Origin: Octopus sinensis
Taxonomy: Eukaryota
DNA: 64,000 bases
Assembly: GCF_006345805.1 (NCBI RefSeq)
Contig: NC_043005.1
Coordinates: 11,842,001-11,906,000, forward strand
Reading direction: 5' to 3'
Made by a program: the position numbers and the translations under genes. Shown here piece after piece: positions 5,151-63,464 of the stretch; positions within the stretch are counted from its first letter, which is position 1; each line of letters opens with the position of its first letter. The notes beneath the pieces were generated by a model. It was not told the origin of the DNA, made no database searches, and saw only the letters and a program-made list of their open reading frames with translations.

Positions 5151-5182
5151 ACCCCACCCCCTTGGGAAAACCCACATACTGG

Positions 5183-5564
5183 TGGAAGCACTCCGTCGGT
5201 TACGACGACGAGGGTTCCGGTTGATCCGACCAACGGAACAGCCTGCTCGTGAAATTAACGTGTAAGTGGCTGAGCACGCCACAGACACGTGTACCCTTAA
5301 CGTAGTTCTCGGGGATATTCAGCGTGACACAGAGAGTGACAAGGCCGGCCCTTTGAAATACAGGTACAACAGAAACAGGAAGTAAGAGTGAGAGAAAGTT
5401 GTGGTGAAAGAGTACAGCAGGGATCGCCACCATCCCCTGCCGAAGCCTCGTGGAGCTTTAGGTGTTTTCGCTCAATAAACACTCACAACGCCCGGTCTGG
5501 GAATCGAAACCGCGATCCTACGACCGCGAGTCCGCTGCCCTAACCACTGGGCCATTGCGCCTCC
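5183..5564 (-). mobile_element. Full-length tRNA-derived SINE (family D)
   Basis: Reverse complement near-identical to 15277-15658; 10-bp direct repeat CCCACATACT at 5171-5180 and 5570-5579 (TSD). Confidence 0.92.
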
Positions 5565-5629
5565 ACCTACCCACATACTAGGGAATGTGGCATCAATCAT
5601 GTGATAAAAATGTATATCATGGATCTCAA

Positions 5630-10305: not shown

Positions 10306-11183
10306 TAGGGTGTCCCGAAAAGATTTACCCATGTTTAAAACAAATTCCTAAAGAATATCGTTTCAGGTAATATTATCTACATTTTATATGTTTTTTGTTC
10401 ACGTGTCTAACGTTTCGTTCGTCTGTAACAGGTTTGTAAACAAACATTAGATTGAAAGCAAAACGTGACCAGATTGTCTCTTTGAAAACAGATGATTTGA
10501 GCAACAATGATATAACAAAACAGTTGAATGTGTGTCAATGCATAGGATTTTAAAATAGGATTTAAAGGTAGATGCATAGAGAATTTAATTTCAGCAGCTT
10601 TCAAAAAGATACGGCTCGACGGTGGTAAAACCACGTTAGCAGAGATGAAGCTCTCCGCCAACAAAATGTCGATCTCGTCTAACGAGATTTCCACTGTGGC
10701 GGCAGTTACCGACAATCAGAATGACATGCTTTATGCACGTCACGCAGGGGACTTGCCTGAAAGTAGGAGCTATTTACGCCATCAGAAACCAGCTTCACTC
10801 ATGGTGCGGACTGCAGTTGTATCTGATTGAGCCAAGCCTCACTTCATCTTCATCGATGCTGGCGTCAAGGTTAACAGTGAAGTTTATGTGGAAATTTTGG
10901 ATGAGAAAGTGTTACCTTGGGTTACAGAAAACTTTGGTGACCGTTACACCTTCCTTCAAGACGGAGCTCCGGCCCACACATCCAATTTGACACAAAGGTG
11001 GTGCAAAGAGAATTTCAGCGTTCAGGCTATGATCAATACAAATGGTGACCATTTTGAAATATAATTACTGCTTTGGATCGGCAATTTATATTAAAAGGTG
11101 TGTGCCAAATTTCATTACGCTACCTTAAATTTATTTCGAATAATTAAGAACTATCAATGGGTAAATCTTTCTGGGACACCCTG
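10306..11183 (+). mobile_element. Internally deleted Tc1/mariner element (maT/DD37D-like)
   Basis: TIRs (T/C)AGGGTGTCCC..AAAGATTTACCCAT at both ends, flanked by TA; peptide QKPASLMV...GVKVNSEVYVEILDEKVLPWV...YTFLQDGAPAHTSNLTQRWCKENF joined directly to AMINTNGDHFE. Confidence 0.9.
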
Positions 11184-11697
11184 TACAGATATACATCTAC
11201 TTCAACTGATTTTATTAACTCCCTGCCTCTAAACATCATTGCCCTTTGTTTCTAACCTTCAATTCCCGCTTACGTGTTCCTCGCTTTTTATCGGCATATA
11301 TAAAAGGCAGGATGCGAGTGTGTACGGGAGTGTAATTTATGCACGTCCACAAATTAGCACGCTTGTCGCTCCAATTTTAGGAGGACATTCGTCATGAACG
11401 TAGCTGTATTTTCGTCAACTTATTTTCCCCAGACACAGCAGCGAATAGTAGTAAATATAAATTTTCAACCGAAACTTTTAACAATCTTCAAATCGGAGAA
11501 ATCACCATTGTTTGCAAACAGGAGGTAATTCCCATTCTAACGATCAGTAAGTTTTTGTTTAGACTTTTGTTTTTTTTCTTTTTTCATTGAGGAAAAAAGT
11601 GTTTTGTCGATTTACGGGCAACACAAACACACACACAACACACACGCGCGAGCGAACATGTATGCAATAGGTGTACGTACGTATGTGTGTGTGTTGC

Positions 11698-11739
<42 letters not shown>

Positions 11740-11740
<1 letters not shown>

Positions 11741-14700
11741 ATCAATATAGGGTGCCAAAAAAAAATTTTGTAGAATTTTTTTGCCACCAGCGGCCTAGTG
11801 GGAAAAAATTAAATAGTCATAGACCATTTTTAAGTTCAACATCAACAATCAAGGAACGGCCATAATAGGCCATTCACCCACTAGAAATAACAGCCAAAGC
11901 TTCAACCGCAAATAAAAGTCAATTCCGTAAACAGGAGAAAATTTAAAAAACATTTACCCTGTAATTTCTTATACGATGCACCGTTTCGTCTGCTGTTTAA
12001 TGGTAAACTAACCTGATTAAATTAAATCAAGCCAATCTTCCATAGGCCCTCAGATTCTTCAGTAAGAAATAGCCACAAGTCGGAACAGATATTTTCACGA
12101 GGCATTTCCGACCCTGCCAAGTTAATATCTGACCTAAAATTTTCAAATCATCGCACTCGCGCCAAATTTATCGGCAGCAAATAAATATAAGCCGTCGATT
12201 CCATTACGGAATTAACCAGAAAATTCATAATTAATCAATATAGGGTGCCAAAAAAAATTTTGTAGAATTTTTTTGCCACCAGCGGCCTAGTGGGAAAAAA
12301 TTAATAGTCATAGACCATTTTAAGTTCAACATCAACAATCAAGGAACGGCCATAATAGGCCATTCACCCACTAGAAATAACAGCCAAAGCTTCAACCGCA
12401 AATAAAAGTCAATTCCGTAAACAGAAGAAAATTTAAAAAAAATTTACCCTGTAATTTCTTATACGATGCACCGTTTCGTCTGCTGTTTAATGGTAAACTA
12501 ACCTGATTAAATTAAATCAAGCCAATCTTCCATAGGCCCTCAGATTCTTCAGTAAGAAATAGCCACAAGTCGGAACAGATATTTTCACGAGGCATTTCCG
12601 ACCCTGCCAAGTTAATATCTGACCTAAAATTTTCAAATCATCGCACTCGCGCCAAATTTATCGGCAGCAAATAAATATAAGCCGTCGATTCCATTACGGA
12701 ATTAACCAGAAAATTCATAATTAATCAATATAGGGTGCCAAAAAAAATTTTGTAGAATTTTTTTGCCACCAGCGGCCTAGTGGGAAAAAATTAAATAGTC
12801 ATAGACCATTTTAAGTTCAATATCAACAATCAAGGAACGGCCATAATAGGCCATTCACCCACTAGAAATAACAGCCAAAGCTTCAACCGCAAATAAAAGT
12901 CAATTCCGTAAACAGGAGAAAATTTAAAAAACATTTACCCTGTAATTTCTTATACGATGCACCGTTTCGTCTGCTGTTTAATGGTAAACTAACCTGATTA
13001 AATTAAATCAAGCCAATCTTCCATAGGCCCTCAGATTCTTCAGTAAGAAATAGCCACAAGTCGGAACAGATATTTTCACGAGGCATTTCCGACCCTGCCA
13101 AGTTAATATCTGACCTAAAATTTTCAAATCATCGCACTCGCGCCAAATTTATCGGCAGCAAATAAATATAAGCCGTCGATTCCATTACGGAATTAACCAG
13201 AAAATTCATAATTAATCAATATAGGGTGCCAAAAAAAATTTTGTAGAATTTTTTTGCCACCAGCGGCCTAGTGGGAAAAAATTAAATAGTCATAGACCAT
13301 TTTTAAGTTCAACATCAACAATCAAGGAACGGCCATAATAGGCCATTCACCCACTAGAAATAACAGCCAAAGCTTCAACCGCAAATAAAAGTCAATTCCG
13401 TAAACAGGAGAAAATTTAAAAAACATTTACCCTGTAATTTCTTATACGATGCACCGTTTCGTCTGCTGTTTAATGGTAAACTAACCTGATTAAATTAAAT
13501 CAAGCCAATCTTCCATAGGCCTTCAGATTCTTCAGTAAGAAATAGCCACAAGTCGGAACAGATATTTTCACGAGGCATTTCCGACCCTGCCAAGTTAATA
13601 TCTGACCTAAAATTTTCAAATCATCGCACTCGCGCCAAATTTATCGGCAGCAAATAAATATAAGCCGTCGATTCCATTACGGAATTAACCAGAAAATTCA
13701 TAATTAATCAATATAGGGTGCCAAAAAAAATTTTGTAGAATTTTTTTGCCACCAGCGGCCTAGTGGGAAAAAATTAAATAGTCATAGACCATTTTTAAGT
13801 TCAATATCAACAATCAAGGAACGGCCATAATAGGCCATTCACCCACTAGAAATAACAGCCAAAGCTTCAACCGCAAATAAAAGTCAATTCCGTAAACAGG
13901 AGAAAATTTAAAAAACATTTACCCTGTAATTTCTTATACGATGCACCGTTTCGTCTGCTGTTAATGGTAAACTAACCTGATTAAATTAAATCAAGCCAAT
14001 CTTCCATAGGCCCTCAGATTCTTCAGTAAGAAATAGCCACAAGTCGGAACAGATATTTTCACGAGGCATTTCCGACCCTGCCAAGTTAATATCTGACCTA
14101 AAATTTTCAAATCATCGCACTCGCGCCAAATTTATCGGCAGCAAATAAATATAAGCCGCCGATTCCATTACGGAATTAACCAGAAAATTCATAATTAATC
14201 AATATAGGGTGCCAAAAAAAATTTTGTAGAATTTTTTTGCCACCAGCGGCCTAGTGGGAAAAAATTAAATAGTCATAGACCTTTTTTAAGTTCAACATCA
14301 CAATCAAGGAACGGCCATAATAGGCCATTCACCCACTAGAAATAACAGCCAAAGCTTCAACCGCAAATAAAAGTCAATTCCGTAAACAGGAGAAAATTTA
14401 AAAAACATTTACCCTGTAATTTCTTATACGATGCACCGTTTCGTCTGCTGTTTAATGGTAAACTAACCTGATAAATTAAATCAAGCCAATCTTCCATAGG
14501 CCTTCAGATTCTTCAGTAAGAAATAGCCACAAGTCGGAACAGATATTTTCACGAGGCATTTCCGACCCTGCCAAGTTAATATCTGACCTAAAATTTTCAA
14601 ATCATCGCACTCGCGCCAAATTTATCGGCAGCAAATAAATATAAGCCGTCGATTCCATTACGGAATTAACCAGAAAATTCATAATTAATCAATATAGGGT

Positions 14701-14774
14701 GCCAAAAAAAATTTTGTAGAATTTTTTTGCCACCAGCGGCCTAGTGGGAAAAAATTAAATAGTCATAGACCATT
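11740..14774. repeat. Tandem array of ~491-bp units (6 full units plus a ~88-bp partial)
   Basis: Unit starts (AATCAATATAGGGTG) at 11740, 12233, 12723, 13214, 13706, 14197 and 14687; units near-identical; both array ends abut (TA)n. Confidence 0.97.
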
Positions 14775-14804
14775 ATATATATATATATATATATAATATA
14801 TATA

Positions 14805-15032
14805 TATATATATAAACCAATGTCAAGATGTATGCAATAGGTGTACGTACGTATGTGTGTGTTGTCCATATATATATATACATATATATATATGTACATA
14901 TACATATAAGCTAATTTCAACGGATTTCGCTCAAATTTGACGTCGATGTTATCTAGTTTGGTTTAAAATAAAGAACTCGATTAGCTTAATAATCGTAACT
15001 TAATCCCGGGCAAAGCTGGGTTATACTGCTAT
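14805..15032 (+). mobile_element. Short non-autonomous Helitron-like element
   Basis: TATATATAAA start, (GT)n body, then GC hairpin CCCGGGCAAAGCTGGG (15005-15020) followed ~8 nt later by CTAT, a degenerate CTRR terminus. Confidence 0.45.
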
Positions 15033-15276
15033 TCATTCACTATTTCTATCTCTCAATCTTCTTATGTTCGTAATTCCTCCTTTTTAACTAATGAAATATT
15101 AACGTCCAAAATGTTACCTTACTATCTTCATCTTCCGACATTTGAAGCATATTTGCAAAATTACGTTCTTACTCTTATTCTTTTTAATCCTGATTGTTTT
15201 TACACTATGCTTAAATACGTACAGATACATATATACAGACAAATGCACACATATATGCATGTGTATGTGTGTGATA

Positions 15277-15658
15277 GGAGGCGCAATGGCCCACTGGTTA
15301 GGGCAGCGGACTCGTGGTCGAAGGATCGCAGTTTCGATTCCCAGACCGGGCGTTGTGAGTGTTTATTGAGCGAAAACACCTAAAGCTTCACGAGGCTCCG
15401 GCAGGGATGGTGGTGATCCCTGCTGTACTCTTTCACCACAACTTTCTCTCACTCTTACTTCCTGTTTCTGTTGTACCTGTATTTCAAAGGGCCGGCCTTC
15501 TCACTCTCTGTGTCACGCTGAATATCCCCGAGAACTACGTTAAGGGTACACGTGTCTGTGGAGTGCTCAGCCAGTTACACGTTAATTTCACGAGCAGGCT
15601 GTTCCGTTGATTCGGATCAACCGGAACCCTCGTCGTCGTAACCGACGGAGTGCTTCCA
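15277..15658 (+). mobile_element. Full-length tRNA-derived SINE (family D)
   Basis: A box TGGCCCACTGG, B box GTTTCGATTCC; 11-bp TSD ATGTGTGTGAT at 15265-15275 and 15662-15672. Confidence 0.92.
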
Positions 15659-16575
15659 TCCATGTGTGTGATGCTCTTATTTCAGATATTTGTGTTTTTT
15701 AACCCCGAACTTCGTTACTTGTATTTTTGTAGCATTTCGCTCCGGTAAAAGAGAAGCACACTCGCGTAAAAGTTTTCTCATTGGCTGCAAGCATTTATAG
15801 CCATTGTGGCTTTAGATCCGGGTTATTTCAGATTGACTGATAGAATATTTTCTCTGAACCTAACCTGTCTTTTTGCATTATTAAGAGCTACATTGTCCAT
15901 AGTATACACTCACTGACACACCCAATATATACACATGAACATATAAAATGAGATATTAAAGATCAGATACAGAATGAGTGAAGGGGAAATAGAAAGAGAG
16001 AAATTTCCAAACGAAAAGAGACGGAAAATATTGAATCCAATAACGAGCAAAGCAGAACATTACTTTAAAGTGGACTTGTTACATGTTATTTCTCATAAAG
16101 AAATGAGACGAATATACGCTTATACATATGTGTGTGTAGTGTAACTATCTGCTCATACGTTGTTCTTCAATATCTAGAAATTGATGTCAGCAAAACCCAT
16201 TTCATTTCAATATATATTTTAAGTTATGTAGGATGCGATGTTTTGCCTAAGAGGAAGCGTATCATCCTAAGTACCTTGCAGTATTTCAGTTTCAGTATTA
16301 CATATTTCAGACTGTAATTTTGGATTCCCCATTTCGAGTGAGTCAGTTATTTCAACATCTATACTGGATTTGACAACAAAGCAAACACACAAAAACAAAA
16401 TGTATTTCAATGAGAGAGAGCTGGCTCCATTCTAATATGTTTACTGACATAATCAACATACCATACAGTTAACCGTATGTGAGGGCGCACATACGCACAC
16501 ACGCGCGTATTATATATATAATATATATATATATATTATATTCATATATATATACATATATACAAACATATATAT

Positions 16576-16622
<47 letters not shown>

Positions 16623-16814
16623 TAACGGGAAAGTTTACGAAAATAAACAAAAGACGAAGGCAGGTGGTGTACAAACAAACAAATGTATTAGTATAGCGCT
16701 CAGGAATAGAAAAAGTCTGTTACGTTTTGAGCTTACGCTCTTCCACAGAAAGATACACAGAAAAAAACAAGGAGAGAAAAAAATTCGTGTTATAGCTAAC
16801 GATCTATCATGGCG
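16623..16814 (-). mobile_element. Family-E ~200-bp element (Penelope-like terminus) with degenerate hammerhead motif
   Basis: Homologous to 17382, 34986 and 44879; ends CCCGTTA then (TA)n; GAAA core changed to AAAA. Confidence 0.8.
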
Positions 16815-17268: not shown

Positions 17269-17587
<319 letters not shown>

Positions 17588-20506: not shown

Positions 20507-20576
20507 TGTCCCTGGGTGGGCTCGAACCACCAACATTTCGGGCAATAGCCGAACGCACTACCGATTGCGCTACATT
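20507..20576 (-). pseudogene. tRNA-Asn-derived pseudogene
   Basis: Minus strand TGTAGCGCAATCGGTAGTGCGTTCGGCTATTGCCCGAAATGTTGGTGGTTCGAGCCCACCCAGGGAC matches metazoan tRNA-Asn; anticodon loop mutated, 5' acceptor strand lost, oligo-T downstream. Confidence 0.75.
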
Positions 20577-20868
20577 TATTTTATACGCGCGAACACACAC
20601 TTTATATAAATTCCTTTCCCTACATCGTATTTATCAAATGCTAATTTCAGTACAGTTGCCACTAGAGTTACAAGTAAACGAAAATTCTATAGGCATTATG
20701 AATAATATATAGTTGACATTAATCAGATAAGATGAAGGCATGGAGGCTAAATGTGAATTGATGTTGGAAAGATACTGATGTAATGTGAACAGCGCTGACA
20801 AACTAATACCGCGGTGCCTTGAGCAAACATTTTCTAGTATTTGTTTCAAACTAATTCGACAGAGAATA

Positions 20869-21282
20869 CCTATTTCTTTGCTACCCACAAGGGGCTAAAC
20901 ATAGAAGGGACAAACAAGGACAGACAAACGGATTAAGTCGATTATATCGAGCCCAGTGCGTAACTGGTACTTATTTAATCGACCCCGAAAGTATAAAAGG
21001 CAAAGTCGACCTCGGCGGAATTTGAACTCTGAACGTAGCGGCAGACGAAATACCTATTTCTTTATTACCCACAAGGGGCTAAACATAGAGGGGACAAACA
21101 AGGACAGACATAGGTATTAAGTCGATTACATCGACCGCGTAACTGGTGCTTAATTTATCGACCCCGAAAGTATAAAAGGCAAAGTCGACCTCGAGGGAAT
21201 TTGAACTCTGAACGTAGCGGCAGACGAAATACCGCTAAGCATTTCGCCCGGCGTGCTAACGTTTCTGCCAGCTCGCCGCCTT
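20869..21282 (-). mobile_element. Family-A SINE with internally duplicated body (head+A+A)
   Basis: Two ~180-bp body units in tandem after one tRNA-like head. Confidence 0.85.
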
Positions 21283-24999: not shown

Positions 25000-25400
25000 C
25001 ACTGCCGAATGCAGTTGCTGATTTACTGGGATCACCATTAGGTGGAAGATTATGCTCTATGTCTCAGTTTTCACATTAATCAGAATTTCCACCACCATCC
25101 TAAACCATTATATCTTTCGGAATCTTTATATACGACGTTGTACTACGATCTCTTAACACAACACATTTTACCTCCCACTAGAAGTTTATCTCTGGTGGTA
25201 GGTTCGAGATGTTTGGTACCAGTGAGAAATCTGCAGTTCTTTGAGGAAAGCTACTGTTCTTTTGGTGAAAGTTTGTGAAGTAACTCTTACATACGCAACT
25301 TTCTGGAATGTGTCCCAAAATTAGTGTTATCCTGAAAATAATGTAGCAGAATTCAGTTAGGTCTGAACATATACTCCCATCATCTATAACCACAAGCTGA
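25000..25400 (-). mobile_element. CR1/L2-like RT N-terminal remnant
   Basis: LTEFCYIIFR...GHIPES...FSLVPNISNL resembles L..LF..I...G.IP..W...PISL...ISK. Confidence 0.4.
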
Positions 25401-25499
25401 CCAACATATTTTGGATGAATTAGACAGATGGAAAATGAAAGAGGTCCGTTGTATATATGTACATGTGTGTGTGTTTGCGTATCGCATGTATATGTTTTT

Positions 25500-26580
25500 G
25501 TGTCGCTTTGTATTGCAGAATCTGCATTTAAGGTCAAAACCGTTTTGAAGAACGTTAGCCTGTAGTTTTTTATAAGCAAGCTTTGATCTTCTACCACTAA
25601 TATGAAACCTCCAGTTTCTGCTTTCAGTCCTGAACTTCTCAGCCACTGATAGGTTGTTGCTTGGTCTACATCAGCATTTCGGCTTTGAACTGTATATTGT
25701 CCATGCAGAGGCTTCTGGCTCCACCGCTCCTCAATTTGTTTCTACCCGTTCTTTTTCAGTCTGTTTGCACATGTTTTGAATGTTTTCTAGCAGTGGTTTC
25801 AGGTTCTTCAACTATTTCAGGATTAATGCCAAGTTCCCTAGCGAATTTGCAAGCTTCCTTGACAATAGAATCTGATATTTTGGTGTTTTCGTGTTTGCAC
25901 ACAAGCCGCAACATCCAGTCTTCTGTACTAGATAAGTACTTGTTCATTGCTATCATGGAGGTCTTATTGCACAGTTTTACCTGCATCACTTCTCTTTCCC
26001 CCTTACATCTAGCTAGGTCCATGTCCTTAGATGTTATTAGCTTACTTGTCCTCCTGTCCAGGTGTTGGAACTCTGTAAGATTCCAGTTAATGATGTTAAA
26101 ACTATACTAGACTATTAGAAGTGCCAGGGTGTTAATGGCTTCGATGCGGCGACTTTTCCGAGTTAAGTTCAGTTTTTAGTATGAGACTTACTCTCCTGTA
26201 ATACTCCTTGTTTTATACTTTTTCGTTCATAGTAACATGTTGTATACCATATCCTTCATTTATCCCCTGGTATTTTTAATTTTCTTGTGGGTCAAGCTCC
26301 TTGATGGTAGAGTCGGTATCTAATTCAATGGAAGCTGCTTGCCTGAGCTTGTCTCTTACAAAAGTTGCTTTAGCAAACAATCAAGGTCAAAATCCAACCC
26401 GACGTCATTGTTGAAATCTTTCAAAGTTGTTAGCAGCCGTACTAGCTCTTCGTTGTTTCTAGCAAACAGTTTCAGATCTTCCGTATAAAACAGACGGTTT
26501 ATTGTTGTATTATATACTTTGAACACATGTCTGGTGTTATTTAATTCATTTGAGAATGAGATCAGTGTCATGCAAAAGAA
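25500..26580 (-). mobile_element. R4/Dong-like element, inverted 5' segment (RT motifs 5-7 to zinc knuckle)
   Basis: LFFCMTLIS..INRLFYTEDLKLFARN (YMDD region), DWMLRLVCKHE.., DLKCRFCN. Confidence 0.8.
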
Positions 26581-34985: not shown

Positions 34986-35197
34986 CGCCATGTTGAATCG
35001 CTAGCTTCTGCACGCATTTTTTTTCTCTCCTTGTTTCTCTCCGTGTTTCTTTTCTGTGTATCTTTCTGTTGAAGAGCGTAAGCTCGAAACGTAAAAGACT
35101 TGTTTTATTTATATTCCTGAGCGCCATACTAATATAATTGTTTGTTTGTACTCCACCTGCCTTCGTCTTTTGTTTATTTTCATAAAGCTTCCCGTTA
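34986..35197 (+). mobile_element. Family-E element with hammerhead-like motif
   Basis: CGCCATGTTG...TCTTTCTGTTGAAGAGCGTAAGCTCGAAACGTAAAAGA...CCCGTTA then (TA)n. Confidence 0.85.
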
Positions 35198-44544: not shown

Positions 44545-45205
44545 TCTAAGTACAAATCTTGAGAAAATCAGGGAGGAGAGAAACATCAATGGAACTGTAA
44601 AAATCTGTAAAACGTTCCAGAAGTTTAGCATTTAAGTATATATGCTCATGTCTAGACATGCAACTATATGCATGGGAATACATGCATAAAACAAAACATG
44701 CAAATCTGAACATGGACTGACTCCAAATACTGCATATATACATACATATATACACACATCCAGACCCCTCCCACGCACTTTTAGCTGGTTCCTCAACCCC
44801 TTTTATCAACCCTATTATCTCCCCTTATTTCGCTCTCGCGTCTCATGTTTGATCTTTGACCTCTGGCCGAAATCAGATCGCCATGTTGATTCGTTAGCTA
44901 CTGCACGCATTTTTTTTCTCTCCTTCTTTCTGTGTTTTTCTCTCTCTGTGTATCTTTCTGTTGAAGAGCGTAGGCTCGAAACGTTAAAGACTTGTTTTAT
45001 TTATATTTCCTGAGCGCCATACTAATACAATTGTTCGTTTGTTTTCCACCTGCCTTCGTCTTTTGTTTATTTTCATAAAGCTTCCCGTTACATATATGCT
45101 CTGCCCTGTTGATGTTGTTGAAATTTCAATGAAGGTGCCTTGGATCTAGGTTAGAACCCGGCTCTTCTTTTTTAGCAAGACACCTTGAAATAAACCTGAA
45201 TAATC
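44545..45205 (+). mobile_element. R4-like 3' end/UTR copy split by a family-E insertion
   Basis: GGAACTGTAAAAATCTGTAAAAC.TTCC and UTR match 18745-19025; continuity resumes at ~45095. Confidence 0.7.
44879..45090 (+). mobile_element. Family-E element with hammerhead-like motif
   Basis: Stem I TCTTT/AAAGA, CTGTTGA-A, stem II GAGC/GCTC, GAA-ACGT-T. Confidence 0.88.
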
Positions 45206-48800: not shown

Positions 48801-50708
48801 TGTGTGCGTGTGTGTGTGTGTGCGTGCGTGTGTGTGTGTATGTGTGTTTGTGTGTGCGTGTCTGTACATTTAGGTGGAAAATGAATTTAGTGAAAAACAA
48901 TGGCGTCATTTACAATGAACATATTGACTTTTACTTGGCAAAATGAATCTAATAAACTGCAATTTGTTTAAAGAAATCTCACAGAATATAATTGAGAACT
49001 GAATAACAGATATCAGTGAATAATTAAAGAAAACAGCAACAACATTAATCTTCCATATTTATATGTCGTTATGCTGCTAATCTTTTTATTCTGTGTGAGA
49101 GATATGCTTTTGAAAGTAATTCATCTGTCATTGAGAAAGCAATATGCGTATAAATATCCCGAATACAGACTGCCCACATGTACAAGGAGTAACGAATACT
49201 CATATATTAAAATTTATATAGCCGAAGACATAAATACACTTCCGCACTCACACATGCAGTAATTTCCTCCACATGTGGATATTAGACACTGATAAATATG
49301 ATATACACATAATTTTTTTTTATGTTACCATATCAAATGCAGAGTGCAGCATAAACGCAAGTAAAAATATCTTCGAGTTGAGAAAAAGAGAAAAAAAAAG
49401 CGTTTATAGGATTAGTATACGTTTATTTTATTTCACAATAGTCTTGATATGGCTGTACAGGGGAGGTTATGCTGAGGTAATGATTAATTAATGTTCAGGT
49501 AGTATTTTAAGGAGGGAGAAAAACACCAAAGCGTCATATTTTATTTTGGTATACCGTTATTATGCTGAGGAGATATCACCGCATTTAAGGGTACACATTA
49601 TTTATTATGCATACGTGCTTATTTGATACTACTACGCTTATTAAGTAGATCTATGTTTGACGGTGTTATGGCAATCCACTCTTATTTTTAGGAATACTAT
49701 ATTTCTGGGATGACTTTATCCCATCAACATATTTTCAAGGATACTTGGCTGTTATTTCTAGAAAACACAGTGACTACTAACAGAAAAATTATTTGATTTT
49801 TGTTTATTCAATATTTTGGTTTCGTGTTTCGGGATTGATATCCTATCTCTGTTAAAGTAAATCAATAAAATGGATTATTTTTTCGCTGTAACATATAACT
49901 CTCTCGGAAAAAAAAAATCTTTAAGTAATATATTCGCACATTAAATGCCTCTCCTGCACTGTCAGCACAAACACATACCGGCACACATACGCACACACAC
50001 GCACATACACACATACATACACACACGCATACATATATATATATACACACCTACATGCGCGAGCGCATATGTTTGGCAGATACACAGACAAACAAAATCT
50101 GTTATGAAATGATTCGTCAACAAAACTGAAAGAAAATTAATTAAGGCAAATGCTCCAGCATGGTCACAATCCTATGACTGAAACATCTAGAAAGATAAAA
50201 CATAAAGAACAAGCACACAGGCAAAATATCACTTAAGAAGCAACATGATAGTGTAATAATAGATCTAAATACACATATTCTGAAATGTAACGTTAAAGTG
50301 CAACTACTTTTAATGTAAAGTACGAAATATTTACATTTTTCATAGATGAAGATTCTGTTTAACAAAGTTCGCATCTTTTAGTTCTGTATTGTACAATATT
50401 AATTTCAGTTCCTATATTCAGTTACAAACGTAACAAGGCTGGGAAAATTCCAGAAAGAAAGATTTCATGTAAAATAGTAAGGATCTGAAAGATACTCAAT
50501 TACTTCTAGTTCAAGATTAGGAAATTTATGTAGATGGCAGGCTACAACATTTGCCATACATGAATACTTACAACATGGAAATATTTAAAAACCATTCAAT
50601 AATATAATACTGGAACTAAATGTAAAGTTCAACATTAGACCAAGTTAAATATCACTGTTTCTGGTCTTCTCTACCTGCACAGAAATGTTAAATGGCTATA
50701 CATTATAC

Positions 50709-51120
50709 AAGGCGGTGACCTGGCAGAAACGTTAACGGCCGGGCGAAATGCTTAACGGTATTTCTTCTGCCGCTAGGTTCTGAGTTCAAACTCCACCGAT
50801 GTCGACTTTGCCTTTCATCCTTTCGAGGACGATTAAATAAGTACAGTTACGCACTGGCGTCGATATAATCGACTTAATCCGTTTGTCTGTCCTTGTTTGT
50901 CCCCTCTGTGTTTAGCCCCTTGTGGGTAGTAAAGAAATAGGTATTTCGTCTGCCGTTACGTTCTGAGTTCAAACTCCATCGATGCCGACTTTGCCTTTCA
51001 TCCTTTCGAGGACGATTAAATCAGTACAGTTACGCACTGGGGTCGATATAATCGACTTAATCCGTTTGTGTATCCATGTTTGTCCTCTCTGTTTAACCAC
51101 TTGTGGGTAGTAAAGAAATA
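50709..51120 (+). mobile_element. Family-A SINE with duplicated body (head+A+A)
   Basis: Junction GTAAAGAAATAG|GTATTTCGTCTGCC at ~50940. Confidence 0.88.
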
Positions 51121-51149: not shown

Positions 51150-51630
51150 CCATCTGAAGCCAGTTTTAAAAACTAGTCGAAACACTTGGACATCGGCCTT
51201 AAGCACCACCAAGTGATATTCAATCTGGATGTACACTACACAATAGTGGTTGAGAGGCGGTTGGATGGAACCTACACTCGCCTCCTTATGAGAGCTCAAA
51301 ATCTCTCGTGGAAGCGCCATCCAACCAAAATGCAAATATATGGGAAACTACCACCTGTGTCATCTCTTGTGAAGGGTTGGAGAGTCCAGTTTGCTGGACT
51401 CTACATTGTTGTAGAGCTGAAAAAGAGGTAATTTCTGCTCTTCTCCTTTGGAAGCCATCTACTCGCAATACCAGAGGGCGCACACTCTCCTACCCTGATG
51501 TAATCTCCAGGGATACAGGCATCCAGCAACAGGATCTCCGTAATGCCATGATGGACCGTGAAGTCTGGCGTAGCATGGTAAATTCCATTGTCTCGACCAC
51601 GGTCGAACAATGATGGTGATGATGACACAA
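51150..51630 (+). mobile_element. 5'-truncated RTE-clade LINE 3' end
   Basis: RLDGTYTRLLMRAQNLSWKRHPT..IYGKLPPVS...LLLWKPS...RGRTLSYPDVISRDTG..DLRNAMMDREVWR; (TGA)n tail. Confidence 0.85.
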
Positions 51631-54089
51631 TAGCGACTTAGATATAAGAAGAATAATAAAAAATTCACAATATAAAAATAGGAAGACACAGATTATCAGG
51701 TTTATGTCAACTTTTAACATTGATTTTAGTCTTATATGTACCTGGACAGTCTAGGCCAATGAAAAATGTATCTCTGAGACGTACAAAAAAAAAAGGTAAA
51801 AAGTGATTATCGAAGTAAAATTCTAGGCTCGAAAGAAACTACCGCTGGTCTGAGGAAGCAAAATAGTAATTACAGCCAGCTAACAACTTAATGTTTGAGT
51901 ACTATGTGAAAAAGGAGAGGATTGACGTTTTGTTCAGGGTTCATCATCCGATGAAAGCTCTGACAGAATGGCAACTCATTTCTCATTTAAAATGCAAATC
52001 AATTTAACTTTGTCGACAATTAGTTAATGTTAGTTCAATTTGTATTGATAAAATCAGAATTCACGTGCTTTTGATGCAACCAAATTAATGGCCTTATGAG
52101 TAAACTAAATCAACGATCTAATGGAATCTTCACCAACACCAATTCATTTCCACTCAATGTCGGATTCAACACGAATAATTGGTCTATTGACAATATACAA
52201 TCCACAAATATTGTCGAAAATAACTGAACAGCGCTAACAGAGAACACACAAAAGTAGACGAACGTAGTCTACTAGTTCTTTCAGATCTAGAGATAAATTA
52301 AAAACAATCAATTTTATGCCAGTATGCCAAGAAACAGAAAAAGAATAAAAATTACATTATCGCCAGAACTTGGTTTACAGTTCGGACAGCAATAGCATCC
52401 ACTAATAGATAAAAATGCTACGATCTTTATCGGGTTGTGAAATATAACATACGATGCACTCATTAAAAATTAAATAAACGCAATAAACATTTCTTAAAGT
52501 GAGACAGAAATAAAGTACAAATTTCACGTAATAAAAACATCACATTGTATAGTTCTGTGTTATATGTAATACAGTGATATAACATACCACTACTTCTCCT
52601 CCATATTTCCTTCACCGAGAACATTCTATCTGAAAGACAAGCAACTTCGACTGAAGAAACTCATCTCTTAATACCGACTGGCACTGTATGCGTTTGATGC
52701 TCGTAAAACCATCAATGCCTGAGGAAATATGATCAAAGAAAATAATGGAATAATTGCCATTGTGTTACTCAAACGTGTATCTAGAGATGTTCTAGCATTA
52801 ATGCTGATACTCAGGTCTTCTCTCGTATGCTGCAACCTTTCATATTTCTATTGATAGTGATTAAATATTGTTAACATTTAAATTTTGATGATCCAGTATT
52901 GCACATTTAATGAAGCATATGTCTTTTGGAAAAACAAAATGGCAAATGGTTCTAATAGTATGCACATTCACAAATTTACACATCTGCATATGTAAACATG
53001 CTACAGGCACACACAGTGTTTTATAATGCGTATGCATATATCTGAATGTGTTTATATAAATCAATAAATATATATACATATATACAGGTAAGTGCGCGCA
53101 CGCAAAGAGAAAAGAGAAAATTGACTAAAAAGGAGAAGTGACTGCAATTATATATGCTTATAGATGTATACATACCTATGTAAAATTGCGCGTATACACA
53201 CGTATTCACGTACGTATGTATATTAATAATTATTTTATGCATTGCGTTAACATCACCTTATATAGAATTATATCGATCTTTACATCGGTGGAGAAGATTA
53301 AAGCAGAGATATACATGATGATAAAGAAGAAGAGAGAAGAGGTGGATATATTATGCAAGGAGACGTAATGTATTTGGCTAACGGTTTTTAAATGATAAAT
53401 AACGTAAGGTAGAAGAGGTAGTGGGATATGACTCGATACACGTTGAACTAAAAGACGTTAAAAAAAATTCTAATATTACCATAGATAGAAAGTCCACCTA
53501 ATCTAGTTATGTTTTCAAACTGACAGTATTGTAATGTTGGTTGTAATTTTCACTTCTGTTGAGAACTAACAGGTGCATTGCAATTGTTATAGCCATTTTC
53601 CAAGTCTGTACGCACTCTCTTCTCTTTTTAATTTTAGTTATTCGCCATTTTCTTTGCTAGTTCATTCCACATGAACTATATACGAGATACTTGTTTAATA
53701 CTATCTATTCGTGCTGCACGAATTTGGGGTGTATGTGAATCTATCAATCTATCCATCTACACGATATGTGTGTGTGTTTTCCATTGTGTATTCGTGTAAA
53801 TATGAGCATGCACACATGTGTATACTGATATATATATATATATATATATATCCATCTGTATTAAATCGATAATCAAAAAGAGAAGTCCATGCATATCCAC
53901 TCATGCAAGCAAAAGAACTTTTGGGAGTAAAAGATGAGTGCGTGGTTAGATATACATACATACATACATACATACATACATACATACATACGTACATACA
54001 TATATATTTAAATATATTTATATATATATGTATATATATATATACGAAGAAATACATGTAAAACTTTACACACAAACACACACACACAG

Positions 54090-54789: not shown

Positions 54790-56232
54790 CATATTATATA
54801 TATATGTATATGTGTGTGTATGTATGTGTGTGTAAGTATGTATGTATGTATGTATGTATGTATGTATGTATGTATGTATGTATGTATATATATATGTATG
54901 TATGTATTTATGCATGCATGCATGCAGGTATGTGTATGCACACATACGTGATTTAAATATGAGTTCATCATCATTATTACGCGATTCACCAGTTCGAAAA
55001 AGATGTGCATGATTACATAACTGAATGTATATGTGTGTGTGTGTATTTATAAGCAAACGTTACATATATAACTTGTACATATGTATTCACACCCATCTGC
55101 ATACGTATGTGTGAATGTATAGGCATACATGCACATATGTGTAAATGTCAATGTTATAATTCATAATGTTTTACTAAAAAGCGTTGATTTCTCTTTTGTT
55201 GATATTTTGAAATACTTTATTAAACGGCAGTCCTAACAAATTTTGTTTATCATCTGCTACTAATATTAATATGGTGTAAACCTTTTTAAAATGAGAATAA
55301 CATTTAAATTACAGATGTGAAAAATGTAAATGATATTAAAAATTAAAATAATATAACATAAAATTATATCTATACAGCTATGGATTAAGTTCTATGAAAT
55401 ATCAGAATTCTTGTGCTGTATGAAAGATACATATTAACAATATAAATATATTAATGATACTTTATAAGCACTGACTGGAGAAGATATGATGTGCTCTGGA
55501 ATAGTGGAAGTATATGGTTCAATTCTCGTGAACGACTTTTATACATTTCTTCTCTTCTGATTTGTGCTTATAATGCATTATATTAGATCCAGTGTTTATA
55601 TAATTGTAGCCTTCATACGGTGAATATGAAGGAAAAATCTATTGACTGTATAAAAAAAAAATCAATTTATACTGGTAATATTTGCTCAGCCCATCCAATG
55701 ATAAAAATTGACTTGTAAATAAATTATTAGTTTTACAGTAAACAAGCAGGCTAACATAATTGTATGCTAACTAAAGAGAGGCAAAACTTTGATTAGGTTT
55801 GCTATGTACTCAAAGACACTTCTAAAAGTCATATACTTAAATATTCATACATATAAAAGCACAGTCATACGCAGCATGTTACACATATTATTCAAATTTA
55901 AAATCCAAACACTCATGGAATATAAGCAATTATTTTATATCCGAGTATATACCTTGTAGCATGGTATTTAAAGCCCATTCATGTACGAATATTTGTCCAC
56001 TAGTGCCTGACATATACGCGTGCACAAACGTTTGGCATGCATGAATGGGTGTATGAGCCAGTGTATATTCTCACATTTGTGTGGAAACGTATGAGTACGT
56101 CCTTGTATGTATGGTAAAACAAATACGCTTGAGTGTACGCGTTTATCTCCTGTGCGTGTGAGGTAGACTTTTTCAGAGGCGGTCCCCAGCGTGGCCCCAG
56201 CCTCTGCCACAAGCCATTACAAGATTATATAT

Positions 56233-56442
56233 ACTCTTTTACTCTTTTACTTGTTTCAGTCATTTGACTGCGGCCATGCTAGAGCACCGCCTTGAGTCGA
56301 GCAAATCAACCCCGGGACTTATTCTTTGTAAGCCCAGTACTTATTCTATCGGTCCCTTTTGCCGAACCGCTAAGTGACGGGGACGTAAACACACCACCAT
56401 CGGTTGTCAAGCGATGGTGGGGGGACAAACACAGACACACAA

Positions 56443-56473
<31 letters not shown>

Positions 56474-56646
56474 CATATATACGACAGGCTTCTTTCAGTT
56501 TCCGTTTACCAAATCCACTCACAAGGCATTGGTCGGCCCGAGGCTATAGCAGAAGACACTTACCCAAGATGCCACGCAGTGGGACTGAACCCGGAACCAT
56601 GTGGTTGGTTAGCAAGCTATTTACCACACAGCCATTCCTGCGCCTG
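56233..56646 (-). mobile_element. Full-length young family-C SINE
   Basis: Near-identical reverse complement of 58855-59274. Confidence 0.92.
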
Positions 56647-59628: not shown

Positions 59629-59771
59629 CCGATCTATTTTGGCCAATTTCTTTGCACTTAAAAATAATGGGAAGAACATTTTCGGTAACAAAAAAAAAAA
59701 GAATTGTTAATATTTTCAGAGGGAAAAGTGAGTGATTTAAGGGCGGTTTGGCTGTTGTTTCTAGCACATCC
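59629..59771 (-). mobile_element. Old interspersed repeat; inverted homolog at 60244-60730
   Basis: GTGCTAGAAACAACAGC.AAAC..CCCTT.AA..CTCAC.TTT.CCTCTGAA.ATATT shared in opposite orientation. Confidence 0.65.
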
Positions 59772-62415: not shown

Positions 62416-62841
62416 CACTGTATTATAATATATCATAATATATATTCTACGATTTGAAGCGACAGTTTTTACATATAAATGGCAGAAAATGATGAACTAA
62501 CACTAGGTTGTTTACAAATATTATATATGTATATATATATATAATATATATATATATGGGTTTGTGTGACTGCGCATATATATACATATACGCATATATG
62601 TATATATATATGTGTGTGTGTTTATGCATAGATATGGTTTTTCGTATAAGCATATATACATATATATATATAATTTAAATGTAGAGATATTACATTGACA
62701 AGCCACTAATTTATTTATATTACAACAGTACATTAAATGCTATGAATACAATATAACATACCATAATAATATATAACATAAAGAATTAATTATATAATCT
62801 ATAAAAGGCCAACATCATATATATATATATATATATATATA

Positions 62842-63025
62842 TCAACATCACAATCAAGGAACGGCCATAATAGGCCATTCACCCACTAGTGGGTGAATGG
62901 CCTATTATGGCCGTTCCTTGATTGTGATGTTGAACTTAAAGATGGTCTATGACTATTTAATTTTTTCCCACTAGGCCGCTGGTGGCAAAAAAATTCTACA
63001 AAATTTTTTGCCACCCTATATTGAT

Positions 63026-63029
<4 letters not shown>
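62842..63029 (-). mobile_element. Solo fragment of the 491-bp array unit terminus with a 92-bp perfect fold-back, inside (TA)n
   Basis: Minus strand TTTAATCAATATAGGGTGGC...CACCCACTAG equals unit positions 1 to ~145; palindrome at 62842-62933. Confidence 0.95.
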
Positions 63030-63071
<42 letters not shown>

Positions 63072-63464
63072 ATATATATATATCGTTTAAACATATATAT
63101 ATGTTTAAGACCGGGAGTGATGAAGTGAATGAGGATAATAGAAGTGGTGAGAGGGAAATGGTGAATAGGAATCTAGAAACATGTTGTGCAGATGAATGCC
63201 GAAAGGATACAATTGTTTGCAGTTGTAACTACGAGTTTTATGAAGCATAAAACTGCATGTGAAGATATCGCTGTATTTATTCATATAACATTTAGGTACA
63301 ACTTGAAATCATATATAACAGGTGGAGTAAAAATGATAAAGCACGACTACAGCAACTACAAGAATAGCATGTTCCTTTTTCAGTATTTGCCCATTATTTA
63401 ATATTGAGATTATTTGCCATGAAACGAGAATCATTAATACTTCTTATAATAATCCTTTCTACTA

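What the first reader, a model, noticed from the sequence alone, without database searches (positions are those of the whole stretch)
11740..14774. Young ~491-bp head-to-tail array inside (TA)n: candidate microsatellite-anchored, rolling-circle-type element becoming a satellite
Seen: 6.2 near-identical units. The array starts exactly at a unit boundary next to (TA)n, junctions read CATAA-TTAA-TCAAT, and there are no TIRs or ORF. A 15-bp-stem hairpin (GGTG.CAAAAAAATT/AATTTTTTTGCCACC) lies ~12 nt from the terminus, and there is an internal CTAGTGGG/CCCACTAG inverted pair. The same terminus recurs beside (TA)n at 63029. Established: Helitron/Helentron elements have subterminal hairpins, lack TIRs, form concatemers and seed satellites. 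Inference: an unrecognised non-autonomous element targeting (TA)n and amplified as concatemers; integration of a circular intermediate is an alternative.
Basis: partly seen in the sequence, partly recalled or inferred. Interest (0 to 1): 0.75.

Follow-up and report, generated by a model that had tools for sequence, protein, structure and literature searches.

The report
Short satellite array inside a TA microsatellite
A real, young, non-coding 491-bp tandem repeat sits inside a (TA)n microsatellite, and a fold-back fragment of it sits in a second (TA)n; it looks more like satellite DNA copied between TA tracts by break repair than a rolling-circle transposon, but the window alone cannot settle this.

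Summary
There are 6.2 head-to-tail copies of a ~491-bp non-coding unit at 11738-14774, 99% alike, between (AT)19 and (TA)21. A second fragment at 62843-63028 abuts (TA)n at the same nucleotide, next to a 12-13-bp hairpin.

- The second locus is a perfect 45-bp-arm snap-back palindrome.
- The other end of each locus falls at a different unit position (88 and 96).
- At both of those ends the (TA)n tract is bracketed by a short direct duplication of unit sequence.
- Units 3/5 and 4/6 share substitutions, which indicates a two-unit duplication.
- A ~45-bp flank is duplicated around the array.

The Helitron/Helentron features I could test fail: no TC/CTRR ends, no subterminal inverted repeats and no shared flanking modules. 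Only the hairpin-bearing end is fixed.

The pattern of one fixed hybrid junction and one variable junction, at sites that already hold an abundant repeat, matches the spread of Rsp-like into 1.688 in Drosophila. My best reading (confidence 0.42) is a satellite-type repeat that spreads to (TA)n tracts by homology- or microhomology-mediated break repair and then grows by unequal exchange.

No eukaryotic genome was searchable, so copy number, empty sites and any match to a described repeat remain untested.

The parts
11658..11699 (+). Flank segment X (ATGTATGCAATAGG...TTGCCC), left copy of a direct duplication that brackets the array
   Evidence: family D5, 83 nt at 88% including the TA tract; 75/83 identical; X is found nowhere else in the window
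11700..11737 (.). (AT)19 microsatellite abutting the fixed terminus of the array
11738..14774 (+). Tandem array: 6 full units of 490-493 bp plus the first 88 nt of a seventh. It begins TTAATCAATATAGGG and ends ...AGTCATAGACCATT
11751..11788 (.). Subterminal hairpin of unit 1 (GGTGCCA8...T7GCCACC), repeated in every unit, 11-13 nt from the fixed terminus
   Evidence: pair I2, 13 nt, 92%
11795..11884 (.). Inverted 8-mers CTAGTGGG (11795-11802) and CCCACTAG (11877-11884) in unit 1, repeated in every unit. The second 8-mer is the centre of the palindrome at locus 2
12723..14686 (+). Units 3-6. Units 3 and 5 share C>T at alignment column 101, and units 4 and 6 share C>T at column 310, which is the mark of a two-unit duplication
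14775..14813 (.). (TA)~21 microsatellite at the variable (position 88) end of the array
14814..14827 (+). 14-nt spacer AAACCAATGTCAAG. It matches unit positions 79-92 at 10/14, and also matches 14908-14921 at 10/14. Origin unresolved
   Evidence: a match of at least 10/14 occurs at 9e-4 of window positions; sequence
14828..14867 (+). Flank segment X', right copy of the duplication, followed by an imperfect (AT)n at 14868-14907
62810..62817 (+). CAACATCA, left copy of an exact 8-nt direct repeat that brackets the (TA)12.5 tract of locus 2
   Evidence: this 8-mer occurs at 1.4e-4 of window positions; sequence
62818..62842 (.). (TA)12.5 tract on the variable side of locus 2
62843..62887 (+). Locus 2, arm 1: unit positions 96-144 in unit orientation, beginning with the second CAACATCA
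62888..63028 (-). Locus 2, arm 2: unit positions 144 to 1 in reverse orientation (96.5% to the unit). The first 45 nt pair perfectly with arm 1, in a palindrome centred on CCCACTAG|TGGG. It ends at the fixed terminus ...CTATATTGATTAA
   Evidence: (dG -71.3, z -18.6)
62981..63015 (.). Locus 2 hairpin with a perfect 12-bp stem (GGTGGCAAAAAA/TTTTTTGCCACC), 13 nt from the terminus
   Evidence: dG -12.7, z -4.1, 0 of 200 shuffles fold as well
63029..63102 (.). (TA)~37 microsatellite abutting the fixed terminus of locus 2

Best explanation
The 491-bp unit is a non-coding, satellite-type repeat with no machinery of its own. It spreads to places that already hold a (TA)n microsatellite. The proposed steps are as follows.
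1. Long (TA)n tracts break or stall replication.
2. The broken TA end pairs with the TA tract of a locus where (TA)n already adjoins the unit. This is a '(TA)n/unit hybrid junction', either at another chromosomal locus or on an extrachromosomal copy.
3. Synthesis then always starts at the same nucleotide, (AT)n|TTAATCAAT, and stops at a variable point.
4. The gap is closed by error-prone joining or template switching back into the TA tract.

At locus 1 about 3 kb, or fewer units, was copied, and the array then grew in place by unequal exchange, including one two-unit duplication. At locus 2, 144 nt were copied, the new strand snapped back on the palindromic CTAG of CCCACTAG, copied 48 nt of itself and was joined.

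Shown:
- the fixed junction at two loci;
- the variable second junctions;
- the snap-back palindrome;
- short duplications bracketing the TA tracts;
- the mark of a two-unit duplication;
- absence of coding capacity and of transposon termini.

Inferred:
- breakage at (TA)n;
- the copying pathway (SDSA with template switching, MMBIR, or capture of an extrachromosomal circle);
- the existence of a source elsewhere in the genome.
For: - The fixed junction is identical to the nucleotide at both loci, and the other junctions fall at different unit positions, 88 and 96.
- This is the signature described for Rsp-like clusters entering 1.688 arrays in Drosophila: the same junction shared between distant clusters, a variable second junction with duplications, movement to loci where the abundant repeat was already present, and later unequal exchange (PMC7403614, read).
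- Locus 2 is a spacer-less palindrome with 45-bp arms centred on CTAG, which is what self-primed snap-back synthesis produces.
- An exact CAACATCA lies on both sides of the (TA)12.5 tract at locus 2. A degenerate AGACCATT/AAACCAAT pair lies around the (TA)21 tract at locus 1. Junctions made by a transposase are not expected to look like this.
- A ~45-bp flank plus TA is duplicated around the array.
- Units 3/5 and 4/6 share substitutions (about 3% by chance on my count). So the array grew, at least in part, by intralocus duplication.
- Locus 2 is 3.5% diverged, while the units differ by 1% or less. The (TA)n/unit junction is therefore older than the present array.
- A second, unrelated ~205-bp family shows the same layout, with a fixed (TA)n|ACGGGAAGC boundary and a variable other end, and it has no terminal hairpin. 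The hairpin is therefore not needed for anchoring to (TA)n in this genome.
- Mollusc satellite junctions that map within a palindrome are on record (PMC5139131). Satellites on extrachromosomal circles and junctions in A/T tracts with microhomology are also on record (PMC11610590).
Against: - There are only two loci, 48 kb apart, so the shared junction could have a single origin.
- No source array, empty site or circular DNA was seen.
- The hairpin lies 11-13 nt from the only fixed end. I estimate roughly a 10-15% chance of that by position alone, and it is what a strand-specific nuclease or terminator signal would look like.
- Microhomology at the fixed junction is minimal: (AT)n|TTAATC against the internal AATTAATC.
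- The short bracketing duplications were found by eye after looking at several junctions, so their p-values are optimistic.
- The X...X' duplication may be an older tandem duplication unrelated to the insertion. Its copies are about 93% alike, against 99% for the units.
Confidence: 0.42

Rival explanations
1. A non-autonomous rolling-circle element (HUH-nuclease type, like Helitron or Helentron). Its hairpin-bearing end is recognised by a transposase encoded elsewhere, it inserts at A|T steps of (TA)n, and it forms concatemers by reading through its terminator or going round a circular intermediate.
For: - A hairpin lies 13 nt from the one fixed terminus on the minus strand of the array, with a perfect 12-bp stem at locus 2 (z -4.1).
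- There are no terminal inverted repeats and no ORF.
- The array is head-to-tail with identical junctions.
- Both loci lie inside (TA)n, which offers A|T steps.
- Helitron-family elements carrying satellite-like arrays are documented in molluscs (PMC7492417; PMC5139131).
- A snap-back copy is plausible for a single-stranded DNA intermediate.
Against: - The terminus is ...GATTAA, not CTRR. The adjoining 5' end in the array would be TTATGAA, not TC.
- No 5' subterminal repeat complements the sequence before the hairpin, and the two loci share no left or right module.
- With the hairpin at the 3' end, the 5' ends vary (position 88, or a snap-back), although rolling-circle transposition starts at a fixed 5' end. 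On the other strand the hairpin sits at the 5' end.
- The substitutions shared by units 3/5 and 4/6 need a later two-unit duplication.
- The duplications bracketing the TA tracts are not expected from a clean insertion without a target-site duplication.
- Family B is anchored to (TA)n without any hairpin.
Confidence: 0.22
2. A retroposed sequence. Read on the minus strand of the array, the unit ends in a stem-loop plus a (TA)n tail, like 'stringent' LINE/SINE partners whose tails are simple repeats. The UA tail primes reverse transcription on nicked (TA)n targets, 5' ends are truncated, and the array is a read-through transcript of tandem units or grew later.
For: - The 3' end is precise, is followed by (TA)n at both loci, and has a stem-loop just upstream.
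- The 5' ends vary.
- A long direct duplication of the flank brackets the array, and long target-site duplications do occur with LINE-mediated insertion.
- LINE and RTE remnants are present in the window.
Against: - The 5' side also ends in (TA)n at both loci.
- The inverted arm of locus 2 duplicates the same region as the direct arm. Twin priming gives non-overlapping segments.
- There is no tRNA, 7SL or 5S resemblance.
- No LINE in the window carries this tail.
- The X' copy does not abut the element: a TA tract and 14 nt intervene.
Confidence: 0.1
3. The array grew in place from a ~579-bp insertion that carried an 88-bp terminal direct repeat (unit 1-88 ... unit 1-88). That insertion would be a small element with terminal direct repeats, or a 1.18-unit rolling-circle product. 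Both array ends, positions 1 and 88, are then true element termini, and unequal exchange between the repeats built (repeat-internal)6-repeat.
For: - The array is exactly n units plus 88 nt, and both ends abut (TA)n.
- The end of arm 1 at locus 2 (position 96) lies only 8 nt from position 88.
- The two-unit duplication shows that unequal exchange acts here.
Against: - There are no TG...CA ends, no primer-binding site after position 88 and only a weak purine tract before position 1 (sequence).
- Any arbitrarily truncated array also has a fractional unit.
- Only one locus shows position 88.
Confidence: 0.12
4. An assembly artefact: a collapsed or expanded repeat, or a chimeric join in TA-rich sequence. 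In that case the array length and junctions are not real.
For: - Half of the differences between units are homopolymer-length indels typical of long-read error.
- TA-rich regions are hard to assemble.
Against: - Unit-specific substitutions follow an ordered pattern.
- An independent second locus has the same terminus.
- The flanks are coherent.
Confidence: 0.04

Closest known systems
Rsp-like satellite spreading into 1.688 arrays on the Drosophila simulans/mauritiana X (Sproul et al. 2020, PMC7403614)
   Same: - One junction is identical at distant loci and the second junction varies, sometimes with short duplications.
- Insertion occurs only where an abundant repeat is already present.
- Arrays later grow by unequal exchange and movement of higher-order repeats.
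- No transposase is involved.
- Extrachromosomal circles, MMEJ, MMBIR or SDSA with template switching are invoked.
   Different: - The 'host' repeat here is a dinucleotide microsatellite, (TA)n, not a 359-bp satellite.
- Only two loci are seen.
- Microhomology at the fixed junction is 0-2 nt here, against 4-7 nt there.
- No data on extrachromosomal circles are available.
Cast1-9 euchromatic satellites of Tribolium castaneum (PMC11610590) and mollusc satellite junctions (PMC5139131)
   Same: - Short arrays of a few kb are dispersed in gene-rich DNA.
- Transitions to the flank are abrupt.
- Some families have junctions in A/T tracts with microhomology.
- One mollusc satellite breaks preferentially within a palindrome.
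   Different: For the Cast satellites no monomer position is favoured at array ends. Here one end is fixed to the nucleotide at both loci, and both ends lie in (TA)n.
Helentron non-autonomous elements (HINE: Cg_HINE of Crassostrea gigas, DINE-1) carrying satellite-like arrays (PMC7492417)
   Same: - Short head-to-tail arrays occur next to a microsatellite.
- A palindrome lies at one end.
- There is no target-site duplication.
- The setting appears to be molluscan (from my memory only).
   Different: - A HINE has a left module (5' subterminal repeat, its complement, then a tetranucleotide-type microsatellite) and a ~60-bp right module (3' subterminal repeat plus palindrome) outside the array.
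- Here there are no such modules and no subterminal repeats, the palindrome lies inside every unit, and the microsatellite is (TA)n on both sides.
Plant transposons that target (TA)n: Micron/rSaTar2, gSaTars, TAFT, MuTAnT (PMC5907723, PMC4486113)
   Same: Elements of 380-1700 bp are flanked on both sides by (TA)n and stack modularly in TA tracts. This is the precedent for anchoring to a microsatellite.
   Different: - All of these are Mutator-like, with terminal inverted repeats of 40-250 bp and target-site duplications of 9-10 bp outside microsatellites.
- Their copies are separated by (TA)n.
- Here there are no terminal inverted repeats, the units are joined directly, and the genome is an animal-type one.

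Membership tests
Helitron (canonical) | Termini 5'-TC ... CTRR-3' | tested here: not met
   The fixed end reads ...CTATATTGATTAA|A(TA)n. Within the array the adjoining start is TTATGAA on that strand, or TTAATCAAT on the other.
Helitron (canonical) | Hairpin about 10-12 nt upstream of the 3' end | tested here: met
   A 12-13-bp stem lies 13 nt from the fixed end on the minus strand of the array. It is perfect at locus 2 (z -4.1) and has one mismatch in the array (z -1.5).
Helitron (canonical) | Insertion between A and T without a target-site duplication | tested here: inconclusive
   Both loci lie in (TA)n, where every step is A|T or T|A and a duplication would be invisible.
Helitron (canonical) | Both termini recur among copies, with a fixed 5' start | tested here: not met
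   Only the hairpin end recurs. The other ends fall at unit position 88 (array) and at a snap-back ending at position 96 (locus 2). Only two loci were available.
Helitron (canonical) | An autonomous partner encoding Rep/helicase with the same ends | not testable with these tools
   No long ORF is present in the window. No eukaryotic genome collection was available. Unit-derived peptides found nothing among 5.8 billion proteins.
Helentron / HINE | A 5' subterminal inverted repeat complementary to a 3' subterminal repeat that precedes the palindrome | tested here: not met
   CCCACTAGGCCGCTGG, which precedes the hairpin, has no inverted partner outside the units at up to 3 mismatches. The unit has no terminal inverted pair.
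Helentron / HINE | Conserved left and right modules flanking the central array | tested here: not met
   Beyond the (TA)n tracts, the flanks of the two loci share only microsatellites and unrelated SINE-like repeats.
(TA)n-targeting Mutator-like elements (Micron, SaTar, TAFT, MuTAnT) | Flanked on both sides by (TA)n | tested here: met
   (AT)19 and (TA)21 at locus 1; (TA)12.5 and (TA)37 at locus 2.
(TA)n-targeting Mutator-like elements (Micron, SaTar, TAFT, MuTAnT) | Terminal inverted repeats of 40-250 bp | tested here: not met
   The longest inverted pairs in the unit are internal and 13-18 nt long.
(TA)n-targeting Mutator-like elements (Micron, SaTar, TAFT, MuTAnT) | Target-site duplications of 9-10 bp at copies outside microsatellites | not testable with these tools
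   No copy outside (TA)n is present in the window.
Satellite DNA (dispersed short array) | Non-coding monomers in head-to-tail tandem with high identity within the array | tested here: met
   6.2 copies at 99%. The longest stop-free stretch is 53 aa. The unit is 36% G+C, like the window.
Satellite DNA (dispersed short array) | Growth by unequal exchange (higher-order pattern) | tested here: met
   Alignment column 101 is T in units 3 and 5, and column 310 is T in units 4 and 6. Only two informative sites.
Satellite DNA (dispersed short array) | Many arrays or high abundance elsewhere in the genome | not testable with these tools
   Exact-pattern scans of metagenome, prokaryotic-genome and viral collections gave 0 hits. 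None of these holds eukaryotic genomes.
Spread by hybrid junction (Rsp-like/1.688 type) | The same junction with an abundant resident repeat at different loci, and a variable second junction | tested here: met
   (AT)n|TTAATCAATATAGGG occurs at 11738 and 63028. The second junctions fall at unit positions 88 and 96, with bracketing duplications. Only two loci.
Non-LTR retroposon with a simple-repeat tail | Pol III promoter or tRNA/7SL/5S-derived head, or a LINE with a matching tail | tested here: not met
   Rfam gave no match at E up to 1 across two units. ARAGORN found none. No other copy of the tail is in the window.

The most novel reading that the evidence does not exclude
This animal genome, probably a cephalopod by my recollection of its SINE-like repeats, may have a general copying pathway anchored to (TA)n. 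At least two unrelated non-coding families would use it: the 491-bp unit and the ~205-bp family B. In this pathway a sequence adjoining a TA tract is repeatedly re-copied into other TA tracts, always from the same nucleotide. The copying could be driven by an unrecognised strand-specific nuclease or element that reads the subterminal hairpin, or by TA-tract fragility alone. The copies then seed new satellites.
Probability: 0.2. Interest if true: 0.7.

Novelty: new member of a known kind. Interest (0 to 1): 0.36.

Why it matters
How satellite DNA reaches new euchromatic sites is still argued, with transposon carriage, extrachromosomal circles and interlocus conversion all proposed. This locus is young and both of its junctions are intact. 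It also has a diverged snap-back sister copy and a mark of two-unit duplication, so insertion and later growth can both be read from the same small example. If the same fixed junction recurs across the genome, TA microsatellites would be landing pads for satellite birth in an animal. Targeting of (TA)n is so far documented mainly for Mutator-like elements in plants. If only these two loci exist, this is an ordinary local rearrangement in TA-rich DNA.

Tried and rejected
1. Other copies of the unit:
- Exact-pattern scans with two unit 21-22-mers of metagenome contigs, prokaryotic genome contigs and viral contigs all gave 0 hits.
- An exact look-up of a 39-aa unit ORF found nothing.
- A 530-aa composite of all stop-free unit peptides, searched against 5.8 billion proteins, gave no hit at E up to 0.01.
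- Full-text searches for unit and SINE sequence strings found 0 papers.

2. Naming the organism:
- Peptides derived from the SINE-like repeats and from LINE remnants hit only unnamed ENA contigs with 88-91% relatives.
- Those contigs contain no unit copy.

3. Structured RNA or a SINE head: Rfam and ARAGORN were negative.

4. Other transposon classes:
- piggyBac-type (a TTAA duplication at the unit junction) was rejected because there are no CCC/GGG terminal inverted repeats.
- Tc1/mariner or MITE was rejected because there are no terminal inverted repeats.
- A small LTR element (TRIM-like) was considered because the array is n units plus 88 nt. There are no TG/CA ends and no primer-binding site.
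- A replicon with a CRESS-DNA-type origin was considered because of the stem-loop. There is no Rep ORF and the loop lacks the nonanucleotide.

5. Unit sequence in the flanks: local alignments did no better than shuffles.

6. Larger shared element: the flanks of the two loci share nothing specific.

7. Pfam on ten neighbouring ORFs returned nothing.
Full report
OBSERVATION

Tandem Repeats Finder reports one array at 11734-14774 with period 490, 6.2 copies, 99% matches and score 5968. The motif AATCAATATAGGG recurs at 11740, 12233, 12723, 13214, 13706, 14197 and 14687.

The array is bounded by (AT)19 at 11700-11737 and by (TA)~21 at 14775-14814. Every internal junction reads ...TTCATAA-TTAA-TCAATATAGGG.

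The six full units differ at only 12 alignment columns, six of them single-base indels in homopolymer runs. The longest stop-free stretch in any frame is 53 aa. There is no terminal inverted repeat and no Rfam or tRNA resemblance.

BLASTN of a unit against the window finds one further locus. It holds unit positions 1-144 in reverse orientation at 63026-62886 (96.5% identity), plus a second copy of positions 96-144 at 62842-62889.

The 18-mer CTATATTGATTAAATATA, which spans the unit end and the start of the TA tract, occurs without mismatch only at 11733-11750 and 63016-63033.

Three corrections apply:
- The hairpin is a 13-nt stem with one mismatch in the array (z -1.5). It is a perfect 12-bp stem at the second locus (dG -12.7 kcal/mol, z -4.1).
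- The 'unit boundary' is defined independently only by the second locus.
- The array ends inside a unit, at position 88.

(TA)n tracts of at least six units cover 3.3% of the window. Two independent placements inside such tracts have a probability of about 1e-3. A shared breakpoint within a 491-bp unit has a probability of about 0.2-0.6% (my arithmetic).

(a) Locus 2 is a fold-back. Positions 62843-62887 pair without a loop with 62888-932, centred on CCCACTAG|TGGG (dG -71 kcal/mol, z -18.6). The fragment then continues to the fixed terminus, and (TA)n lies on both sides.

(b) The non-fixed ends differ, at unit position 88 at locus 1 and position 96 at locus 2. They lie only 8 nt apart in unit coordinates.

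(c) At both non-fixed ends the TA tract is bracketed by a short direct duplication of unit sequence.
- At locus 2 an exact CAACATCA lies at 62810-62817 and again at 62843-62850. This 8-mer occurs at 1.4e-4 of window positions.
- At locus 1 the pair is AGACCATT|(TA)21|AAACCAAT, which extends to 10/14 identities. A match that good occurs at 9e-4 of positions.
- I found these by eye, so the probabilities are optimistic.

(d) A 42-nt flank segment X (11658-11699) recurs as X' (14828-14867), and each copy is followed by a TA tract. X occurs nowhere else in the window. The copies are about 93% alike, less than the units are to each other.
- The 14 nt between (TA)21 and X' match both the unit (positions 79-92) and the sequence after the second TA tract at 10/14.
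- I therefore cannot tell an older ~100-bp tandem duplication from a duplication made at insertion.

(e) The only two informative substitutions are shared by units 3 and 5 (column 101) and by units 4 and 6 (column 310). This is the pattern left by duplication of a two-unit block. By my count, about 3% of random placements of two shared variants would fit a single such event.

(f) Locus 2 is 3.5% diverged, while the units differ by 1% or less. The (TA)n/unit junction is therefore older than the present array.

SURROUNDINGS

The window is eukaryotic, 35% G+C, and packed with microsatellites and SINE-like repeats. Nothing coding lies near the array. A mariner-like transposase remnant lies 0.7 kb upstream, identified by eye only because Pfam was silent.

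I compared the 100 nt next to every TA tract. This showed that fixed boundaries with (TA)n are common in this genome.
- A ~205-bp family, which I call B, has four copies. All start at (TA)n|ACGGGAAGC and their other ends vary by up to 12 nt.
- Three of the four copies lie between long TA tracts. The fourth lies in unique DNA and is 99% identical to one of the other three.
- B has no terminal hairpin.
- A SINE-like family carries a (TA)n at a fixed internal position.

WHAT COULD NOT BE TESTED

No eukaryotic genome or repeat library was available. The following all returned nothing:
- pattern scans of metagenome, prokaryotic and viral collections;
- an exact ORF look-up;
- a composite of all unit peptides against 5.8 billion proteins;
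- full-text sequence searches.

Relatives of the window's SINE-like and RTE repeats exist on unnamed ENA contigs at 88-91% identity, but those contigs carry no unit copy.

MECHANISM

The anatomy has five parts:
- one junction with an abundant resident repeat, identical at two loci;
- a variable second junction with small duplications;
- placement only where that resident repeat already exists;
- later intralocus growth by unequal exchange;
- a snap-back copy.

Except for the snap-back copy, this is the signature reported for Rsp-like clusters entering 1.688 arrays on the Drosophila simulans and D. mauritiana X chromosome. There, a rare hybrid junction is proposed to seed new clusters through homology of the resident-repeat part. 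The pathways invoked are MMEJ, MMBIR/FoSTeS, SDSA with interlocus template switching, or re-integration of extrachromosomal circles (PMC7403614).

Dispersed short satellite arrays with junctions in A/T tracts, and satellites on extrachromosomal circles, are described in Tribolium (PMC11610590). Non-random junctions within a palindrome are described for a mollusc satellite (PMC5139131).

My best reading (confidence 0.42) is the same process with (TA)n as the resident repeat:
1. A broken or stalled TA tract pairs with the TA tract of a (TA)n/unit junction.
2. Copying therefore always starts at TTAATCAAT and stops at a variable point.
3. The end is joined back by error-prone, template-switching repair.
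4. The array then expands in place.

The junction anatomy, the palindrome, the two-unit duplication and the lack of transposon features are shown. The breakage, the pathway and the source are inferred.

THE HELITRON/HELENTRON READING

What fits this reading:
- the subterminal hairpin;
- the absence of terminal inverted repeats and ORFs;
- the head-to-tail arrangement;
- the presence of A|T steps in the target.

What fails:
- The fixed end is ...GATTAA, not CTRR, and no TC start can be placed.
- No subterminal repeat complements the sequence before the hairpin.
- No conserved left or right module exists, unlike the HINE structure defined in PMC7492417.
- Only the hairpin end recurs. On the strand where the hairpin is 3'-subterminal the 5' ends vary, although rolling-circle transposition begins at a fixed 5' end. 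On the other strand the fixed end is 5', but so is the hairpin.
- A one-step concatemer of a monomer cannot give the variants shared by units 3/5 and 4/6.
- A simple circle integration would give a whole number of units, not 6 units plus 88 nt.

I keep a non-canonical HUH or rolling-circle element as the main rival, at 0.22. The other rivals are:
- a retroposon with a (TA)n tail (0.10);
- in-place growth from a 1.18-unit progenitor with an 88-bp terminal direct repeat (0.12);
- an assembly artefact (0.04).

Transposons that target (TA)n are known in plants (Micron, SaTar, TAFT, MuTAnT; PMC5907723, PMC4486113). All are Mutator-like, with long terminal inverted repeats that this unit lacks.

VERDICT

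The feature is real and tidy, and its junctions are informative. The evidence favours a satellite-type repeat moved between TA microsatellites by repair and then amplified in place. That is a known kind of process with a new host repeat, rather than a new rolling-circle element.

I file it as a new member of a known kind, with interest 0.36. The most novel reading still open is a general copying pathway anchored to (TA)n, used by several families and possibly nuclease-driven. I give it a probability of about 0.2, and it would deserve an interest of about 0.7 if true.

Noticed in passing
window 16625-16802 (+), 17384-17586 (+), 34991-35195 (-), 44884-45088 (-): A ~205-bp interspersed family, which I call B. 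All four copies share the boundary (TA)n|ACGGGAAGC, and the other end varies by up to 12 nt. Three copies lie between very long TA or CA-TA tracts. The fourth lies in unique DNA next to only CATATATGTA and is 99% identical to copy 2. There is no terminal hairpin. The layout is the same as for the 491-bp unit.
   Followed up: partly
window 29172, 30795, 41644, 43393, 43778, 56455 (TA tracts): A SINE-like family carries a (TA)n tract at a fixed internal position, with conserved sequence starting within 1-14 nt on both sides. TA tracts at fixed positions in repeats appear to be the rule in this genome.
   Followed up: partly
window 11658-11699 and 14828-14867: A ~42-nt unique segment, each copy followed by a TA tract, is duplicated on either side of the array at about 93% identity. 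It is either an older ~100-bp tandem duplication or a long duplication made at insertion. I could not resolve which.
   Followed up: partly
window 62810-62817 and 62843-62850: An exact CAACATCA lies on both sides of the (TA)12.5 tract at locus 2. The left copy has no further unit sequence upstream. Unexplained.
   Followed up: partly
window 20513-20574 (-), 20865-21233, 50757-51120: An Rfam tRNA hit (40.6 bits) that ARAGORN does not call. It lies next to two dimeric ~180-bp SINE-like repeats that look tRNA-derived. From memory the family resembles octopus SINEs. Not verified.
   Followed up: no
window 10546-11061 (+): A frameshifted remnant with a mariner/Tc1-like transposase C-terminus (...TFLQDGAPAHTS...), 0.7 kb upstream of the array. 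It was recognised by eye and Pfam gave no hit.
   Followed up: no
window 25181-25741 (-), 51254-51610 (+): C-terminal remnants of LINE/RTE-type reverse transcriptases. The RTE-like tail (51248-51631) has an 88% nucleotide relative on unnamed ENA contig L002 (sample ERZ27289496), and some protein relatives carry PF00078. A separate SINE-like family (for example 56232-56540) has an 89% relative on L001 (sample ERZ1023377).
   Followed up: partly
window 59700-59810 and 60210-60320: An inverted pair of ~100-nt segments that share CTAGAAAYAACAGCCAAA with unit positions 141-158. A third match lies at 49745-49761. This may be chance or a shared short motif.
   Followed up: no
window 15263-15670 versus 5173-5578: A ~410-bp repeat just right of the array is 95% identical to an inverted copy 10 kb upstream. 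Further copies lie at 33617, 1004 and 38712.
   Followed up: no
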